DNA of 64,000 nt from Octopus sinensis (Eukaryota): contig NC_043003.1 of NCBI RefSeq assembly GCF_006345805.1, positions 48,484,001-48,548,000 on the forward strand, in the 5' to 3' direction. Positions within the stretch are counted from its first letter, which is position 1, and the number at the start of each line of letters is the position of its first letter. Below the pieces are notes generated by a model. It saw only the letters and a program-made list of their open reading frames with translations, ran no database searches and was not told the origin of the DNA. Position numbers and translations under genes: made by a program. Below are positions 1,600 through 60,860 of the stretch, one piece after another.

Positions 1600-2165
1600 A
1601 ATGGTGTTGACTGGTGATTGAAAGGACCGATGATGGTGGCAATGAAGTTGCTGATAATATTTATGATTGTGATGATGATGATGACGATGATGATGATGAT
1701 GATGGTTGTGGTGGTGACGAAGAAGATGGTAATAAAGATAATAATGATGATAATGATGGTGATGATGATGGTTGTGGTGGTGATGAAGAAGAAGATGGGG
1801 AGAGTTATAATGATGACAATGATGCTTATATGATGATGACAGAGATGGTGATGATGATGATGATGATGATAATGATGATCATGGTGGTGTTGCTGAGGAG
1901 GAAGAAGAAGAAGGTGAGAATGATAATGACGACAAAGATGGTGATGGTGATAATTATTATTATTATGATGATGATGATAGTGAAGAATTGTGATGATGAT
2001 GATGATAAAGAAGAAGACGAAGAAGAATGAGAGGAAGAAGAAGAAGGTGTTAATGATAATGATAACAAGGATGATTATAATAATGATAGTTGTGATACTG
2101 TGATGATAAAAATGGTGACAGTGATAATAATGATGATGATTATAGATGGTGATGACTGATAATGA
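1600..2165. repeat. Degenerate (GAT/GGT/AAT/GAA)n trinucleotide array
   Basis: Visible low complexity; source of ORFs 1614-2030, 1618-1833 and 1826-2068. Confidence 0.95.
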
Positions 2166-2337
2166 GATGATATATACAGATTGGCCATAAATTACCTTTA
2201 CAATTTGAAAAGTACAGAAAAAAAAAGGATGACTCAGCAGAATTTATTGGAAAACACAAATAAAGTTTTATTAGAAATATCAGAATACTTCCAGATGGGT
2301 ATTCAAATTGTAAAAGTAATTTATGTCACCCTGTATA

Positions 2338-2552
2338 TATGATGATGACGACAATGATGATGATAATGATGATGATGGTGGTGGTGGTTGTAGTGATGCC
2401 AGTGTTGAAATGATGGTGGTGATGATGATGATGCTGCTGCTGATGGCAATGATGATGCTGATGATTCTGATGATGGTGATGTTCTAGATGATGATCCTGA
2501 TGATGATGATGGTGGTGGTGGTGATAATGATGATGATGATGATGATTATGAT
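2338..2552. repeat. (GAT/GGT)n array
   Basis: Visible low complexity. Confidence 0.95.
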
Positions 2553-41864: not shown

Positions 41865-43260
41865 TCAGGAGAGCATTATATACATGCATGATGCATCATT
41901 AAGATACATATGAAAATTACAAAATACTCCTTTTCCTGTTTTTTTTGTAGCAACAATTTTGTCATATGACAGCTTCCTTGCAATGTCATTTTCTAGAGAC
42001 AATATGCACAAGGAATTTAAGTGCTCTTCAGTCATGGTAGACCGAAATTTATTCTTTACGGAGGAAAGTTTTGAGGAACTCCTTTCTGCTTCACAACTCA
42101 TGATAGGCATTGTCAAGTATAGCTTATGTGCAGTGTTAATATTAGGGGACACTTCAATTAATTGTTGCTCATAAATAAGCTGAACAACTGTGCAATGCAT
42201 TTTAGATGGTGTGTTTCCTTCTGTGTTCTGGGATTTTGTAAGGTGTAAATACTCTTTGAATTGATAACACTCATTTATTAATTTGTGGTCAATATTGTCT
42301 TTGTAATGCGATATTATAAGTTTGATACGATTCTCACCAAATTCTGATTTGTTCATCAATTCTGAGAGAAGCTTGAATCATTTCGCAATCTGCTCATATG
42401 GGTCCATCTTGCTTAACTGGGTTATCAAGCAGTCATAGACTTGATTTAGAACTTCTATCCTAAGTTTTTCGGCCCCTTTCAAAGAAGCCCGATCATTTGT
42501 CCCATCTGCAAATTTCTTTGTAACAATGCGTTTGGAAACATCAGAATAATTTGAGAAGATATATTCACATAAACCTTTTGCTACTGATTCATAGTGTGCA
42601 TCCCTGTTGGATGGATTTTCTTGTAGTTCTTTAACAAATGAAAGCAAAGATGCTAGCAGAAGGTAACCTACAAATACATCAGAACCAAGGGTTTGGAGTT
42701 TCTTACATGTTTTATTAAAACACTCCATAACTTCTTCACAAACAACTGTTAAAACAGCATATTCTAATTTTACCAACTTGTGGTATAAGTTCTTTGCATC
42801 TCGCTCACATTCAGGCTTCTCTTCTGAGTCTTCAAACATATGTTTGAGAATTTGTAAAATATTCCTATATCCATTTTTAATTGCCTGGACAGCTTCAAAG
42901 TGTGCAGACCATCTAGTTACACTTAAGCTCTTTAGAGAAAAGGCTAGATTGCCCTGTGTGTTCAAAAGACCCTTCTTCGAGGAGATTCAGAGGTTAACAA
43001 CAGGAACTCTGTAAAAGTTCCTATTGTTAACCTCTGTAACAATAGGAACCTTGAAAATAAAGATTCAAGGAGCTGCCCTTCCTCAGTCTGACTAATCTGT
43101 TAAATAACAACAGTTACTCAATAAGTCAAAGGAGAGGAGGCACTGCTCATAACCTTTGCAGGATCTTCCATTTTACATCTGAGCTATTCAGTCAATTGTT
43201 TCTAAGTCACTGCTATTTGACAACTTCTTTCAACTATTAAGCCAGTAGGGGTCCAGAGGT
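41865..43260 (-). pseudogene. hAT transposase relic (ZMYM1-like type), C-terminal half plus N-terminal remnant
   Basis: LKSLSVTRWS..., C-terminal SCEAERS.SKL..VKNKFRSTMTEE.LN.L.ILSLE dimerisation motif. ORFs 42378-42965 and 41865-42359 are one frame broken by a single TGA. Confidence 0.9.
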
Positions 43261-51133: not shown

Positions 51134-52149
51134 ATATATATATATATTTATACATACACATTATCATCGTCATCATCTTTTAGCATCCATTTTCCATGTT
51201 GGTATGGACAGGACATTTTAGCCAGAGATAGCAAGCCGGAGAGCTGCACCAGCTTCCAGTTTGATTTGGCTTGGTTTCTACAGCTGGATGCCCTTCATAA
51301 CACTAACCACTTTACCGTGTGCCAGGTGCTTTTAATGTGGCACCAGTATGAGCACTTTCATGTGGTGCTGGCACAAGTGCTTTTTGCATGGCACTAGCAT
51401 GACAGACTTCTTTCAGTTTCTGTCAACCAAAGCCACTCATAAGTCTCTGATATACCTAGGGCTATAAAAGAGGCTTGCCCAAGTTTCTACACAGCAGGAC
51501 TGAACTTGAAATCATGTGGGTGGGAAGCAAGTTTCTTAACCACACCTGCACCTGGTCACCAATACTTCATACATAAATGAAATAACATTGTTGTATGCTA
51601 GTCTTATTGCTTAACCCTTTCAAATTTAAACCAGCCCAAATATTGCGCCAGTGTACCAGTTCACACCATCCAAATCTTGCTCTCACACCTATCCTACAAT
51701 GTCATTCTAAAAATAGACAATCACATCATTGAGATAATAATGCATGATTAATTCAAAATGATGTAAATAAAAATTAGATTTGACACAGAAATCTGAATGC
51801 TAAGGGATTGAAAATTGTATTTTAAATTTCCTGTTTGTTGGTTGTTTAATTAAATGATGATGATGATGTGTAAACTCTAATTACTGAAAAAACAGAATGC
51901 AGGCAATTAATTCACTTGCACAAAATTGCCAGGTGGTAAATGCAATGAAACGAGTCGGGAACCCTTGTTCTAAACAGTCACTTAATTTGGTAGAAACAGC
52001 AGTCAAATCTCCCTCAAATGACACCCTACTGAATTAAGAAAGGAAGGCAATGTAATAACTGTAAGTAGGCATAAAGACTAGATGATTTTTTTGATAAGTC
52101 TACTCTGTCAGGCCTGACCTGGAGTTAAGCAACAAATACATATAGCTGA

Positions 52150-52982
52150 TTGCGCTGGTATGGTTACATGTTGCGTATGAATGAGGACAGTTGTGTGAAA
52201 AAGTGTCACAGCCTAGCAGTAGAGGAAACCTGTGGAAGAGGTAGAACCAGGAAGACCTGGGATGAGGTGTTGAAGCATGACCTTTGAACGTTGGGCCTCA
52301 TGGAGGTGATGACTAGCGACTGAGACCTTTGGAGTTATGCTATGCTTGAGAAGGCCCAGCAAGCCAAGTGAGACCATAACCATGGCCTATGCCAGTGCAG
52401 AATAACCGGCCCATTTAAGAGTACCCGTCAATCATTGGGCAATGAACTGCACTTGCGAAGACCTGTTGAGTCAAGTGAAGTCATTGTTGTGGCTGATGCC
52501 AGTACTGCCTGATTGGCACCCATGCCAATGGCACATAAAAAGCACTATTTGAGCATGGTCGATACCAGTGCCACCTGATTGGCACCCATGCCAATGGCAC
52601 ATAAAAAGCACCATTCGTGCATGGTCGATACCAGTGTCGCCTGACTGGTCCTGTGCTGGTGGCATGTAAAAAGCACCATTCGAGAATGGACATTGCCAGT
52701 GCAACCTGATTGGCTCCTGTGCTGGTAGCATGTAAAAAACTCCATTCAAGTGGGATTGATGCCAGTACTGTCTGACTGGCCCTCATGCCGGTGGCATGTA
52801 AAAAGCACCCACTGCACTCTTGGAGTGGCTGGCATTAGGAAGGGCATCAAGCTGTAGAAACTTTGTCAGATCAGATTGGAGCTTGGTGCAGCCTTCTGGC
52901 TTGCCAACTCTCAGTCATTCATCTAACCTGTGCTAGCATGGAAAGCAGACTTTAGACGACGATGATGATGAAGATGATGAGA
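52150..52982 (+). mobile_element. 5'-truncated RTE LINE: ORF C-terminus, 3' UTR with about 5 tandem units, (GAT)n tail
   Basis: LRWYGYMLRMNEDSCVKKCHSLAVEETCGRGRTRKTWDEVLKHDL*TLGL matches the RTE C-terminal RLRW.GHV.RM...RGR..KTW pattern. Confidence 0.88.
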
Positions 52983-55937: not shown

Positions 55938-56469
55938 AACTTATATAATATATTTACACCCATAAATAGACATGGGTAACTTTCTGAGATATATGTAAAT
56001 ATACTTGGCTGAATCATCATTAATTGTACAGTTATCAAAACACAAAGAAAGATTTGACCTGAGAACCACGATTATTCACAAACATTTTATTCTAATAAAC
56101 ACACACAAACACAGACCTGTATGTGCCAACACGTATACAGACACAACTCAGACCCATACAAACAAGATACTGGAATTGCATTTGTCAAAGCAACAAATTG
56201 CTGGAATATTACTGACACACATACTAAAATATACATTAAAAGTGATAGAATGTGTTACTTCAACAGAAACAGTTTATAATGTCAACACATAACAAAACAC
56301 AATTGCTAGTTAGTTAGTTTCCCCACTTTATTCAATTGAATTCATGAGGGTTTCTAAGTAATGAATGTGTTTATGGAGATGTGATTTGCTGTACTTCATA
56401 AAACAAGCCAAGGCCAAGCTAAGCAAAAATCACTGTCTTCCACATACAAGCTTGTCCTTTCAGGTGCTC

Positions 56470-59143
56470 GTACCACACAAAAAGCACCAGTATTTCATAT
56501 ATGTACCACACAAAAAGCACCAGTGTTGTATACATGTACCACACAAAAAGCACCAATGTTGCATACATGTACCACACAAAAAGCACCAGTGTTGCATACA
56601 TGTACCACACAAAAAAGCACCAGTGTTGCATACATGTACCACACAAAAAGCACCAGTGTTGCATACATGTACTACACAAAAAGCACCAGTGTTGCATACA
56701 TGTACCACAAATAAAGTGCCAGTGTTGCATACATGTACCACAAAAAAGCACCAGTGTTGCATACATGTATCATAGAAAAATCACCAGTGTTGCATACATG
56801 CACCACACCAAAAGCACCAGTGTTACATACATGTACCACACAAAAATCACCAGTGTTGCATACATGTACCACCCAAAAAGCGCCATTGTTGCATACATGT
56901 ACCACACAAAAAACGCCAGTGTTGCATACATGTACCACACAAAAAGCACCAGTGTTGCATACATGTACCACACAAAAATCACCAGTGTTGCATACATGTA
57001 CCACACAAAAAGCGCCAGTATTGCATACATGTACGACACAAAAACCACCAGTGCTGCATACATGTACGACACAAAAAGCGCCAGTGCTGCATACATGTAC
57101 CACACAAAAAAGCACCAGTGTTGCATACATGTACCACAAAAAAAGCACCAGTGTTGCATACATGTACCACAAAAAAGCACCAGTGTTGCATACATGTACC
57201 ACACAAAAAGCACCAGTGTTGCATACATGTACCACACAAAAAGCACCAGTGTTGTATACATGTACCACACAAAAAGCACCAGTGTGGCACACATGTATCA
57301 CACAAAAAGCACCAGTGTTGCATACATGTACCACACAAAAAGCACCAGTCTTGCATACATGTACCACACAAAAAGCGCCAGTATTGCATACATGTACGAC
57401 ACAAAAACCACCAGTGCTGCATACATGTACGACACAAAAAGCGCCAGTGCTGCATACATGTACCACACAAAAAGTGCCAGTGCTGCATACATGTACCACA
57501 CAAAAAGTGCCAGTGCTGCATACATGTACCACACAAAAAGCACCAGTGTTGCATACATGTATCATAGAAAAATCACCAGTGTTGCATACATGTACCACAC
57601 AAAAAGCACCAGTGTTGCATACATGTACCACACAAAAATCACCAGTGTTGCATACATGTACCACACAAAAAGCACTAGTGTTGCATACATGTACTACAAA
57701 AAGCACCAGTGTTGCATACATGTACCACACAAAAAGCACCAGTGTAACATACATGTACCACACAAAAAGCACCAGTGTAACATACATGTACCACATAAAA
57801 AAGCACCAGCGTTGCATACATGTACCACATAAAAAAGCACCAGCATTGCATACATGTACCACACAAAAAGCACCAGTGTTGCATACATGTACCACACAAA
57901 AAGCACCAGTGTTGTATACATGTACCACACAAAAAGCACCAGTGTGGCACACATGTATCACACAAAAAGCACCAGTGTTGCATACATGTACCACACAAAA
58001 AGCACCAGTCTTGCATACATGTACCACACAAAAAGTGCCAGTGTTGCATACATGTACCACACAAAAAGCACCAGTGCTGCATACATGTACCACACAAAAA
58101 GTGCCAGTGCTGCATACATGTACCACACAAAAAGTGCCAGTGCTGCATACATGTACCACACAAAAAGCACCAGTGTTGCATACATGTACCACACAAAAAG
58201 CACCAGTGTTGCATACATGTATCATAGAAAAATCACCAGTGTTGCATACATGTACCACACAAAAAGCACCAGTGTTGCATACATGTACCACACAAAAATC
58301 ACCAGTGTTGCATACATGTACCACACAAAAAGCACCAGTGTAACATACATGTACCACATAAAAAAAGCACCAGCATTGCATACATGTACCACACAAAAAG
58401 CACTAGTGTTGCATACATGTACCACAAAAAGCACCAGTGTTGCATACATGTACCACACAAAAAGCACCAGTGTAACATACATGTACCACACAAAAAGCAC
58501 CAGTGTAACATACATGTACCACATAAAAAAGCACCAGCGTTGCATACATGTACCACATAAAAAAGCACCAGCATTGCATACATGTACCACATAAAAAAGT
58601 GCCAGTGTTGCATACATGTACCACACAAAAAGCACTAGTGTTGCATACATGTACCACAAAAAGCACCAGTGTTGCATACATGTACCACACAAAAAGCACC
58701 AGTGTTGCATACATGTACCACATAAAAAAGCACCAGTGTTGCATACATGTACCACATAAAAAAGTGCCAGTGTTGCATACATGTACCACACAAAAAACAC
58801 CAGTGTTGCATACATGTACCACACAAAAAGCACCAGTGTTGCATACATGTACCACACAAAAAGCACCAGTGTTGCATACATGTACCACACAAAAAGCACC
58901 AGTGTTGCATACATGTACCACACCAAAAGCACCAGTGTTGCATACATGTAACACACAAAAAGCACCAGTGTTGCATACATGTACCACACAAAAAGCACCA
59001 GTGTTGCATACATGTAACACACAAAAAGCACCAGTGTTGCATACATGTAACACACAAAAAGCACCAGTGTTGCAAACATGTACCACACAAAAAGCGCCAG
59101 TGTTGCATACATGTACCACACAAAAAGCACCAGTGGTGCATAC
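56470..59143 (+). repeat. 33-bp minisatellite, about 81 units (GTACCACACAAAAAGCACCAGTGTTGCATACAT), inside an RTE 3' UTR
   Basis: Visible tandem array; continues into RTE tail 59144-59350. Confidence 0.97.
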
Positions 59144-59863
59144 TTGCACCTATACCAGTGCTGCATAAATACACCCATGCCAGTGACATGTAAAACACGT
59201 CCAGGACACTCTTAAGTGGTTGGCATTAAGAAGGGCATCAAGCTGTAGAAACCATGCTACAATAGAATATTGGAGTCTGGACATCTCCCAGCTATCCAGT
59301 TCCATGTCAAACTATCTAACCCATACCCACATGGAAAGTGGACAGTAAACAAAGCAGCTATGAGCCCACGAAATTAGGGATGCTCAGTTGGAGACAGTTG
59401 CAGGAGATGAGCCTGTGTTTCTTCTTTATATGTATAAAGAAGGAATAACACTATATGATGGCCAATGTTATTTCTTCTTTAAGTTTAAGTTACAAAGCTG
59501 AATAAATGGAGAGGAGTCAGAACAAGATGCAATCTCCAAGTGGTTTAAATCCCAAGTTTCCCATATCCAGGTGGCTAGAAAGTGACAGCAGATGGGACCT
59601 GGATACAGCCTGTCCTCCTTAGAATATAAGGAGACAAGGGCTGAAACACTTGCCTAAGGGAGTTTCTTCTCAAAAAAACCTTCAGCTGTTTAGCCCTCTG
59701 AAGTTTCTTACCACTATATGTCTATATATAACAACCAATTATGATCACACACACACACACACATATAATAACAAAGGGTAAAATTAATTAATTAAGAAGT
59801 AATCAGTAATTTCACCAAGTAGAATTCGGCACGAAAAAGACCATTTCATGGTAAGCTTAAGTA

Positions 59864-60111
59864 ATACTTTATAATTAGGGTTCAGCAGAGATTTGCTTCA
59901 CCACATACCGAAGTTTAGAAATAGCAGTCAAAAAATCTTAGCTATTCCTTCTACTTTAAAAGGGGCTCCCTGCGTGGATTGTTTTCAAGTACTTTGGTTT
60001 TTCTGGGAGCCCCTGTTAAAGTAGAAGGAGTAGCTAAGATTTTTTGACTGCTATTTCTAAACTTCGGTATGTGGTGAAGCAAATCTCTGCTGAACCCTAA
60101 TTATAAAGTAT
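59864..60111. repeat. Fold-back: 107-bp inverted arms (2 mismatches), 34-nt spacer
   Basis: Arms 59864-59970 and 60005-60111. Confidence 0.95.

Positions 60112-60194: not shown

Positions 60195-60860
<666 letters not shown>

What the first reader, a model, noticed from the sequence alone, without database searches (positions are those of the whole stretch)
56455..59350. 2.7-kb 33-bp satellite born inside an RTE LINE 3' UTR
Seen: the array starts at TCAGGTGCTCGTACCACACAAAAAGCACC, resembling the GTGGCACRTAAAAAGCACC motif in every RTE tail here, and runs straight into the RTE terminal block (GTGGTTGGCATTAAGAAGGGCATC...). Each unit keeps AAAAAGCACC and adds the palindrome TACATGTA. Inference: a snapshot of satellite genesis from a retrotransposon UTR.
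Basis: partly seen in the sequence, partly recalled or inferred. Interest (0 to 1): 0.75.

Follow-up and report, generated by a model that had tools for sequence, protein, structure and literature searches.

The report
Minisatellite grown inside an octopus RTE tail
A 2.7-kb run of about 81 copies of a 33-base unit has grown inside the untranslated tail of one old, truncated RTE-type jumping gene in an octopus genome; it is a clean but ordinary example of a transposon tail turning into a tandem-repeat array.

Summary
TRF finds one array at 56470-59150: period 33, 81.2 copies, 92% matches.

The DNA on both sides of the array belongs to one 5'-truncated RTE-like LINE copy.
- The left flank (56378-56467) is the ORF end and UTR start.
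- The right flank (59216-59350) is the family's 3' terminal block.
- In two sister copies from Octopus vulgaris (L003, L008) the same two parts lie only about 50-100 bp apart, separated by one to three 25-27-nt core units.

The 33-mer is that native core plus about 7 extra bases: 21/27 identity to the L008 core with one 7-nt gap, and no shuffle in 3000 scores as well. Short, degenerate 25-27-nt units survive at both array edges.

Exact multi-unit blocks repeated 11, 20 and 22 units apart show growth by unequal exchange. Units differ about 5% from their consensus, while the host tail is about 29% from the family consensus. Amplification therefore happened in place and later than the insertion.

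No second 33-mer locus turned up in any sequence I could reach, so "satellite" status is not shown. This is best called a single-locus, TE-derived minisatellite. It is a new member of a known kind, of modest interest.

The parts
56378..56462 (+). End of the RTE ORF and start of the 3' UTR of the host copy. Weaker similarity may extend back to about 56315. The copy is 5'-truncated.
   Evidence: 77% identity over 88 nt to L003 18391-18311(-), E about 1e-12. L003 carries the ORF end ...MLGLTEEMAKDWKM* just upstream. Multiple alignment with other RTE ORF ends, W52130-52400, W53230-53400, L008 and L009.
56463..56489 (+). First, native 27-nt UTR core unit, GGTGCTCGTACCACACAAAAAGCACCA. It lacks the extra 7 nt of the array unit.
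   Evidence: By eye, colinear without gaps with the single core of sister copy L008 (AGGTGCTGGTGTCATGTAAAAAGCACC), 21/27, directly after the shared anchor ACA[A/G]GCTTGT. 27/27 identity to the 33-mer variant if 7 nt are gapped.
56470..59150 (+). 33-bp tandem array, 81.2 copies. 80 full units run from 56496 to 59138.
   Evidence: TRF. Unit list. Mean edit distance to consensus 1.69 per 33 nt, about 5.1%.
57189..58310 (+). Higher-order duplication inside the array. 57189-57353 equals 57849-58013 (5 units) and 57519-57650 equals 58179-58310 (4 units), both at a 20-unit (660 bp) offset. Also 57715-57848 equals 58443-58576 (22-unit offset) and 56991-57089 equals 57354-57452 (11-unit offset).
   Evidence: Runs of exactly identical consecutive units that include non-consensus variants.
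59139..59215 (+). Three degenerate short units (25, 25 and 27 nt) that grade from the array into the native last core and pre-tail spacer.
   Evidence: Edit distances of 12, 14 and 18 to the 33-mer, against 0-5 inside the array. TRF period-25 row at 59129-59185. They align to the last core of other copies.
59216..59350 (+). RTE 3' terminal block (tail). It is diverged, and its terminal (GAT)n is degenerate and may run to about 59365.
   Evidence: Aligns at 70-83% to at least 15 other tails in the window and to tails in all nine O. vulgaris loci. 71% identity to the young-family consensus. It shares the old-subfamily signature GAAACCATGC...A[T/C]AGA..ATTGGAG with L003_18233 and L008_3565.

Best explanation
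An old, 5'-truncated copy of an RTE-like LINE sits at about 56378-59350 in an Octopus genome.

This family's 3' UTR natively carries a tandemly repeated core (...GGTGNNNCAYGTAAAAAGCACC...) just upstream of a conserved terminal block of about 170 nt.
- The abundant young subfamily has 0-5 copies of a 62-67-nt unit, and one copy has 12.
- The older subfamily to which this copy belongs has 1-4 copies of a 24-27-nt unit.

In this one copy a hybrid unit arose that is about 7 nt longer. Its 5' half looks like the downstream cores (CAGTGCTGCATA/CATGTA). Its 3' half is identical to the first core (CCACACAAAAAGCACC).

The hybrid unit then multiplied in place to about 81 copies. The likely routes are unequal sister-chromatid or homologue exchange, or replication-restart misalignment. 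Later rounds duplicated blocks of 11-22 units.

Shown: position, colinearity, unit homology, relic edge units, block duplications, and the low divergence of the array relative to its host.
Inferred: the chimeric origin of the 33-mer, the exchange mechanism, and the absence of any function.

It is most likely selectively neutral, a TE-derived minisatellite (VNTR).
For: 1. Array.

2. Host genus: a peptide read from the tail consensus hits only Octopus vulgaris and O. bimaculoides proteins plus one unnamed ENA entry.

3. Element anatomy (ORF end, UTR, tandem core repeats, tail, (GAT)n) seen in W52130-52990 and W53230-53850 and in L009 16080-16950.

4. Colinearity:
- Left flank 56382-56467 matches L003 18391-18311.
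- Tail 59172-59284 matches L003 18268-18163, same strand and order, with about 90 nt of 25-nt units between them.
- L008 has the anchor CACAGGCTTGT, one core, then the tail.

5. Unit homology:
- 18/20 to the canonical core, reached by 1 of 2000 shuffles.
- z = 6.0, 0 of 2000 shuffles, against the short-unit copy W54625.
- 21/27 with a single 7-nt gap against the L008 core, 0 of 3000 shuffles.
- 27/27 with 7 gapped nt against the locus's own first unit.

6. Edge units are short and degenerate, while the interior is uniform at about 5%.

7. Exact multi-unit blocks at 11-, 20- and 22-unit offsets.

8. The host tail is 71% identical to the family consensus, against 87-96% for young copies.

9. The same 3' region has expanded elsewhere:
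- L007, 62 nt x 12.4.
- L001, 137 nt x 5.9.
- L009, 20 nt x 5.3.

10. PMC9115989 notes that a microsatellite fills most of the 3' UTR of octopus RTE-2_OV and that this is common in RTEs.
Against: - Only about 247 kb of octopus DNA could be inspected (the window plus 9 loci). A genome-wide family of 33-mer arrays cannot be excluded.
- Only two sister copies of the old subfamily were found. One (L003) is 3'-truncated and the other (L008) carries an insertion in its UTR.
- The exact path from the 26-27-nt core to the 33-mer is ambiguous. The extra 7 nt can be placed as ACCACAC or as GCATA+AT.
- No orthologous locus or second individual could be examined, so in-place growth after insertion is inferred from divergence alone. 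Ongoing homogenisation could also keep an old array uniform.
- The single strand of the unit folds no better than shuffles (z = +1.0), so there is no hairpin support for a slippage mechanism.
Confidence: 0.8

Rival explanations
1. The 33-mer array, or a shorter version of it, already existed in the UTR of an active master RTE. It was copied to this and other loci by retrotransposition, so the element is a vehicle that spreads the repeat.
For: UTR repeat number varies between copies from 0 to 12, so arrays do travel with the element. TE-carried satellite-like arrays are known in molluscs (oyster Helentrons; title and abstract of PMC7492417).
Against: Both sister copies of the same old subfamily (L003, L008) have only 1-3 short units and no 33-mer. 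No second 33-mer locus was found in 247 kb containing 66 tails. The array units (5% from their consensus) are far less diverged than the host tail (29% from the family consensus). Block duplications are local.
Confidence: 0.1
2. The 33-mer is an independent, pre-existing satellite. The RTE sequence lies next to it by chance, or an RTE inserted into it.
For: None directly. Only the lack of genome-wide data leaves this open.
Against: The RTE lies on both sides of the array in the right order and orientation, not the satellite on both sides of an RTE. The first unit sits at the native core position after the shared anchor. The unit shares the core motif. The edges grade into native units.
Confidence: 0.03
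3. The array length or its internal structure is an assembly artefact, a mis-assembled expansion or collapse of a shorter or longer repeat.
For: Tandem arrays are hard to assemble. No reads were available here.
Against: 36 distinct unit variants are arranged in an ordered, non-random higher-order pattern with clean relic edges. That is what real arrays look like in long-read assemblies.
Confidence: 0.05
4. The array is a coding exon for an 11-residue repeat protein. The unit has no stop codon in any of the six frames, and ORFs reach 574 aa.
For: Long ORFs on both strands. The unit length is a multiple of 3.
Against: 15 of 80 units are 31, 32, 34 or 35 nt and shift the frame repeatedly. The context is a TE UTR. 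No true protein relative was found among 1.84 billion representatives. The best look-alikes are unrelated repeats, and the one checked at DNA level (P0072/L010) is unrelated. By my own estimate a stop-free 33-mer is expected by chance at roughly the few-percent level.
Confidence: 0.01

Closest known systems
PisTR-A satellite of pea, derived from the hypervariable tandem-repeat region in the 3' UTR of Ogre LTR retrotransposons (Macas et al. 2009, as summarised in PMC9659126)
   Same: A retrotransposon 3' UTR that natively holds a variable short tandem repeat. One variant of that repeat was amplified and homogenised into a long array.
   Different: The host there is an LTR element in a plant. 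PisTR-A is a true genome-wide satellite with large arrays free of the element. Here the host is a non-LTR RTE-like element in a cephalopod, and only one 2.7-kb array, still embedded in its element, is known.
LINE 3'-end-derived satellites: the cetacean common satellite (L1 3' end), chicken HinfI/SCR1 (CR1 3' UTR plus part of ORF2), and Drosophila 18HT (HeT-A 3' non-coding region) (PMC9659126)
   Same: The monomer derives from the 3' non-coding part of a non-LTR retrotransposon.
   Different: In those cases a large piece of the element became the monomer, and the satellites are abundant and often centromeric or Y-linked. Here the monomer is a 33-nt derivative of an internal 26-27-nt UTR repeat, and the array is single-locus as far as is known.
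Internal VNTRs of human retrotransposons (the SVA VNTR region, minisatellites in L1 UTRs) and TE-derived minisatellites in general (my own knowledge; Ahmed & Liang 2012 appears in the reference list and table of PMC9659126)
   Same: A minisatellite-size unit (10-100 bp) inside a retroelement, with copy number varying between element copies and expanding locally by unequal exchange.
   Different: A different element clade and host. Polymorphism between individuals has not been tested here.
Satellite-like arrays carried by mobile elements in molluscs and Drosophila: oyster Helentrons (title and abstract of PMC7492417) and DINE-1 central tandem repeats (table of PMC9659126)
   Same: A mollusc example of a mobile element with a built-in tandem-repeat module whose copy number varies and can seed longer arrays.
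   Different: Those carriers are rolling-circle DNA transposons that disperse many short arrays. Here the carrier is a retrotransposon, and dispersal of the 33-mer has not been seen.

Membership tests
RTE-clade LINE (host element) | One ORF with an apurinic-type endonuclease and an RTE-clade reverse transcriptase | not testable with these tools
   The copy is 5'-truncated to the last few codons. No RT ORF of 110 aa or more is linked to a tail in the window, and none was seen next to tails in the loci. No RT phylogeny was possible.
RTE-clade LINE (host element) | ORF C-terminus of the form ...LRW.GH..RM...GR.RKTWDEVV..DL..LGLTE.M..DR.LWR..., contiguous with the UTR and tail | tested here: met
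   Seen in W52130-52400 and W53230-53400, L009 16080-16250 and L008 4250-4110, and L003 18440-18395. The array's left flank aligns to its last codons. That this motif marks the RTE clade comes from my own knowledge and was not tested.
RTE-clade LINE (host element) | 3' terminus made of a short tandem (microsatellite) repeat rather than poly(A) | tested here: met
   Canonical copies end in (GAT)n. PMC9115989 states that microsatellites are common in RTE 3' UTRs. In the array's own copy the terminal repeat is degenerate (AAACAAAGCAGCTATGAG).
TE-derived tandem array (UTR-derived minisatellite or satellite) | Head-to-tail array of homogeneous monomers | tested here: met
   81.2 copies at 92% matches.
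TE-derived tandem array (UTR-derived minisatellite or satellite) | Monomer homologous to a defined segment of the TE | tested here: met
   18/20 to the canonical core. 21/27 with one 7-nt gap to the sister-copy core, 0 of 3000 shuffles. z = 6 against the short-unit copy.
TE-derived tandem array (UTR-derived minisatellite or satellite) | Array sits at the homologous position, with both flanks colinear in intact element copies | tested here: met
   L003 and L008.
Satellite DNA in the strict sense | High genomic abundance, with many or very long arrays, typically heterochromatic | tested here: inconclusive
   No other 33-mer was found in the rest of the window plus 183 kb of O. vulgaris, in JGI metagenomes, in the GTDB genome collection, or in either protein search. 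No octopus genome could be searched as a whole.
Minisatellite / VNTR | Unit of 10-100 bp, array of 0.5-30 kb, with interspersed variant repeats | tested here: met
   33-bp unit, 2.68-kb array, 36 unit variants in ordered blocks.
Minisatellite / VNTR | Length polymorphism between individuals | not testable with these tools
   No second assembly of this locus could be reached. Exact look-ups of 18 window ORFs found none in the protein collection.

The most novel reading that the evidence does not exclude
The 33-mer is not confined to this locus. It would be an emerging Octopus satellite family seeded from the short-core UTR of an old RTE subfamily. Either it forms larger arrays elsewhere (for example pericentromeric ones), or it is spread by RTE copies that carry it. 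This locus would then be a preserved birth-site intermediate, still framed by its parent element.
Probability: 0.12. Interest if true: 0.55.

Novelty: new member of a known kind. Interest (0 to 1): 0.3.

Why it matters
This is an unusually legible example of how a retrotransposon's built-in UTR repeat becomes a long tandem array. The parent element frames the array on both sides. Relic units survive at both edges. Sister copies show the unexpanded state, and block duplications record the mode of growth.

It also shows that the 3' region of octopus RTE-like elements expands repeatedly. About one RTE tail occurs per 3.7 kb in the DNA sampled here, and other arrays built from the same region were found (62 nt x 12, 137 nt x 6, 20 nt x 5). 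This matters for repeat annotation, for assembly, and for interpreting TE-rich cephalopod genomes.

It does not reveal a new mechanism. If the 33-mer proves to be abundant genome-wide, it would provide a dated origin for a cephalopod satellite.

Tried and rejected
1. A six-frame chimera of the 33-mer searched against the 5.8-billion-protein index gave no hit. The GGSGG linkers I added may have filled the candidate list, so this negative is weak.
2. An exhaustive HMMER search with two real array ORFs against 1.84 billion representatives gave 408 hits. All of those inspected are unrelated 11-residue repeats. The closest, P0072, was fetched (L010), and its 33-bp DNA unit is unrelated.
3. Exact pattern scans found nothing: the 33-mer in JGI metagenomes and GTDB genomes, a two-unit gapped pattern in metagenomes, and the RTE tail in GTDB genomes. 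These collections appear to hold no octopus DNA.
4. A search with the decayed RTE ORF end from 52130-52400 found no candidates.
5. Exact look-ups of 18 window ORFs found none in the collection. The locus could therefore not be recovered from another assembly, and the species within Octopus stays open.
6. L006 looked like a possible orthologue because P0013 resembles the ORF at 60344-60715. It shares only repeat copies with the window.
7. Hairpin-driven slippage: a trimer of the unit folded as single-stranded DNA is no more stable than shuffles.
8. Rfam and tRNA scans of the window gave nothing, so no tRNA-derived SINE head and no known RNA family explains the element.
9. A full-text search for three motif strings from the element found no paper.
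10. A coding reading was rejected because of frame shifts between units.
Full report
**1. Observation**

The sequence at 56455-59350 is as described. TRF reports one array at 56470-59150: period 33, 81.2 copies, 92% matches, score 4367, consensus GTACCACACAAAAAGCACCAGTGTTGCATACAT.

Splitting on the CATACATGTA anchor gives 80 full units from 56496 to 59138. 65 of them are exactly 33 nt and 15 are 31, 32, 34 or 35 nt.
- TACATGTA occurs in 75 of 80 units, and 75 of the window's 79 occurrences lie in the array.
- AAAAAGCACC is exact in 50 of 80 units.
- The block GTGGTTGGCATTAAGAAGGGCATC lies at 59216-59239. It is one of 13 such blocks in the window, where shuffles give none.

**2. Host organism and element**

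The block is the start of a conserved tail of about 170 nt. Typical copies end it in ...CATGCTAGCATGGAAAACGGACGTTAAACGATGATGATG, that is, in (GAT)n.

A peptide read from the tail consensus hits only 'hypothetical predicted protein [Octopus vulgaris]' entries, O. bimaculoides UniRef entries and one unnamed ENA entry. The window is therefore Octopus DNA. The species was not determined.

I fetched nine O. vulgaris loci (L001-L009, about 183 kb) through those proteins. Together with the window they hold 66 tail starts, about one per 3.7 kb.

Three copies show the full 3' anatomy: W52130-52990, W53230-53850 and L009 16080-16950. In order they have:
- an ORF end (...LRWYGYMLRM...GRGRTRKTWDEVLKHDL.TLGLMEVMTSD.DLW...*);
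- a UTR;
- 1.5-5 tandem units of 62-67 nt, each holding GGTGGCACRTAAAAAGCACC;
- the tail;
- (GAT)n.

That C-terminal motif and the microsatellite terminus are what I know of RTE-clade LINEs. PMC9115989 states that microsatellites are common in RTE 3' UTRs and fill most of the 3' UTR of octopus RTE-2_OV. No reverse-transcriptase part is attached to these copies, so clade membership was not tested by phylogeny.

**3.

Within the window, the right flank 59172-59350 aligns at 70-83% to at least 15 tails. The left flank matches nothing in the window.

In the O. vulgaris sample the left flank does find a partner.
- Window 56382-56467 matches L003 18391-18311 (77% over 88 nt, E about 1e-12).
- On the same strand, about 40 nt further on, L003 18268-18163 matches the window's 59172-59284.
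- Read out, L003 has the ORF end ...MLGLTEEMAKDWKM*, then the module TGATTTGCTGTACTTGATAAGAC...CACATACAGGCTTGTTCTTTCGGGTGCC, then about 90 nt made of two to three 25-nt units, then GTAAAGTGGTTGGCATTCGGAAG....

A second sister copy, L008 3640-3410(-), has CACAGGCTTGT, one core AGGTGCTGGTGTCATGTAAAAAGCACC, a short spacer and the tail.

The window has CACATACAAGCTTGTCCTTTC, then AGGTGCTCGTACCACACAAAAAGCACC, then the array, then the tail.

The array's two flanks are therefore neighbouring parts of one RTE 3' end. The array sits exactly where the family keeps its tandem core.

The tail alignment places the host copy with an old subfamily that includes L003_18233 and L008_3565 (signature GTAAAGTGG..., GAAACCATGCCAAAACAGACA.TTGGAG). 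Its tail is 71% identical to the young consensus, while young copies score 87-96%.

**4. Where the 33-mer comes from**

Twenty of its 33 bases match the canonical core: GTACCACACAAAAAGCACCA against GTAGCACATAAAAAGCACCA, 18/20. One of 2000 shuffled 33-mers scores as well.

The match is better to copies with short units.
- W54625(-) gives z = 6.0, with 0 of 2000 shuffles reaching it.
- Against the single core of sister copy L008, the unit aligns 21/27 with one 7-nt gap (ACCACAC). No shuffle in 3000 reaches that score.
- Against the locus's own first unit it aligns 27/27 with 7 gapped bases (GCATA plus AT).

By eye, the first unit and the L008 core are colinear without gaps: 27 nt each, 21/27 identical, with five of the six differences transitions (sequences).

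The 3' half of the 33-mer (CCACACAAAAAGCACC) is identical to the first native core. Its 5' half (CAGTGCTGCATA, CATGTA) resembles the degenerate units that survive after the array:
- 59139-59163, CATACTTGCACCTATACCAGTGCTG;
- 59164-59188, CATAAATACACCCATGCCAGTGACA;
- 59189-59215, TGTAAAACACGTCCAGGACACTCTTAA.

I infer that the 33-mer is a hybrid of adjacent native cores, made by a misaligned exchange that duplicated about 7 nt. The exact placement of the extra bases is ambiguous.

**5. Array dynamics and age**

Interior units lie 0-5 edits from consensus (mean 1.69, about 5.1% per site), evenly along the array. The four boundary units are 25-27 nt long and 11-18 edits away. That pattern is expected when unequal exchange homogenises the interior and leaves the edges behind.

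Runs of exactly identical consecutive units that include rare variants recur at fixed offsets:
- 5 units at +20 (57189-57353 = 57849-58013);
- 4 units at +20 (57519-57650 = 58179-58310);
- 4 units at +22 (57715-57848 = 58443-58576);
- 3 units at +11 (56991-57089 = 57354-57452).

The array therefore grew at least partly by duplication of blocks of 0.36-0.73 kb.

The host copy is far more diverged than the array: 29% from the family consensus, and 23% from L003 in the left module. Amplification was thus later than insertion, or turnover is still going on.

A trimer of the unit folded as single-stranded DNA is no more stable than shuffles (z = +1.0). I favour unequal exchange over hairpin-driven slippage.

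**6. Other loci with the 33-mer**

None was found.
- The rest of the window and 183 kb of O. vulgaris.
- JGI metagenome contigs, with two different patterns.
- The GTDB genome collection.
- The 5.8-billion-protein index (weak, see the tried-and-rejected field).
- An exhaustive HMMER search of 1.84 billion representatives with real array ORFs. The look-alikes there are unrelated repeats.

These negatives have low power, because no octopus genome could be searched as a whole. The locus could not be recovered from another assembly.

**7. The region is expansion-prone**

In the small O. vulgaris sample, other arrays derive from the same RTE 3' region:
- L007 16163-16933, the 62-nt UTR unit x 12.4 at 94%, sitting just before its tail;
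- L001 3682-4496, a 137-nt unit x 5.9 made of the tail plus (GAT)n;
- L009 16233-16338, a 20-nt unit x 5.3 at the ORF end.

The window's array is the extreme of a common tendency, both in copy number and in having a new unit length.

**8. Rivals**

- *An independent satellite next to an RTE by chance, or an RTE inserted into a satellite.* This is contradicted by RTE sequence in the right order on both sides and by the graded edges.
- *An array inherited from a master element.* This is possible but disfavoured. Sister copies lack it, and the array is much less diverged than its host.
- *A coding repeat.* The unit has no stop codon in six frames and ORFs reach 574 aa. But 15 of 80 units shift the frame, and there is no protein relative.
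- *An assembly artefact.* This cannot be excluded without reads. The ordered variant structure argues against it.

**9. Comparison with what is known**

TE-derived tandem arrays are well documented. Examples from 3' UTRs or 3' ends of retroelements are:
- PisTR-A, from the hypervariable Ogre 3' UTR;
- the cetacean common satellite, from the L1 3' end;
- chicken HinfI, from the CR1 3' UTR;
- 18HT, from the HeT-A 3' region (PMC9659126).

Mollusc mobile elements that carry satellite-like arrays are also known (title and abstract of PMC7492417).

This locus works like the PisTR-A case, in which a variable UTR repeat had one variant amplified. It differs in three ways: the host is a non-LTR RTE-like element, the organism is a cephalopod, and so far it is a single embedded 2.7-kb array rather than a genomic satellite.

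**10. Verdict**

- The origin inside an RTE 3' UTR is supported.
- 'Satellite genesis' is not shown.
- It is a new member of a known kind.
- Interest is 0.3. Its value lies mainly in how legible the example is and as a caution for repeat annotation in octopus genomes.

Noticed in passing
window 59864-59970 and 60005-60111: A pair of 107-nt inverted arms, 98% complementary, with a 34-nt loop. This is a MITE- or foldback-like element about 500 bp downstream of the RTE tail, followed by a long (TA)n/(CA)n tract.
   Followed up: partly
window 41865-42965 (-): Two adjacent ORFs (164 and 195 aa). The downstream one carries a hAT C-terminal dimerisation domain (Pfam PF05699, E = 3.6e-6). Probably a decayed hAT transposase.
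   Followed up: partly
L007 16163-16933 (-): The canonical 62-nt RTE UTR unit is expanded to 12.4 copies (94% matches) directly upstream of an intact tail and (GAT)n. Other copies have 0-5 units.
   Followed up: yes
L001 3682-4496: A tandem array of 5.9 copies of a 137-nt unit (97% matches) made of the 3' part of the RTE tail plus its (GAT)n. This is a second, different kind of array built from the same element.
   Followed up: partly
L009 16233-16338: A 20-nt unit (TGACAAATGACTGAGATGAT) repeated 5.3 times exactly at the end of an RTE ORF. The ORF terminus also expands.
   Followed up: no
window and L001-L009 as a whole: 66 RTE tail starts in 247 kb, about one per 3.7 kb. They fall into a young class (87-96% identical to the consensus) and an old class (70-76%).
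   Followed up: partly
window 56365-59198, both strands: The 33-mer has no stop codon in any of the six frames, which gives overlapping ORFs of up to 574 aa on both strands. Gene predictors could mistake these for genes.
   Followed up: yes
L006 9-1511, 8230-9953 and 14980-17105: Three long arrays with an 84-bp period that encode C2H2 zinc-finger repeats (HTGEKPY linkers). They are typical of the expanded octopus zinc-finger gene family.
   Followed up: no
window 1614-2552: Long, impure (TGA)n/(ATG)n tracts, about 110 and 70 copies, with a 66-bp higher-order period. Possibly a much-expanded RTE terminal microsatellite.
   Followed up: no
L008 about 4080-3650 (-): The UTR of the sister RTE copy is interrupted by a short element with inverted ends (AACCCTTTAG...CTAAAGGGTT), apparently a MITE insertion.
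   Followed up: no
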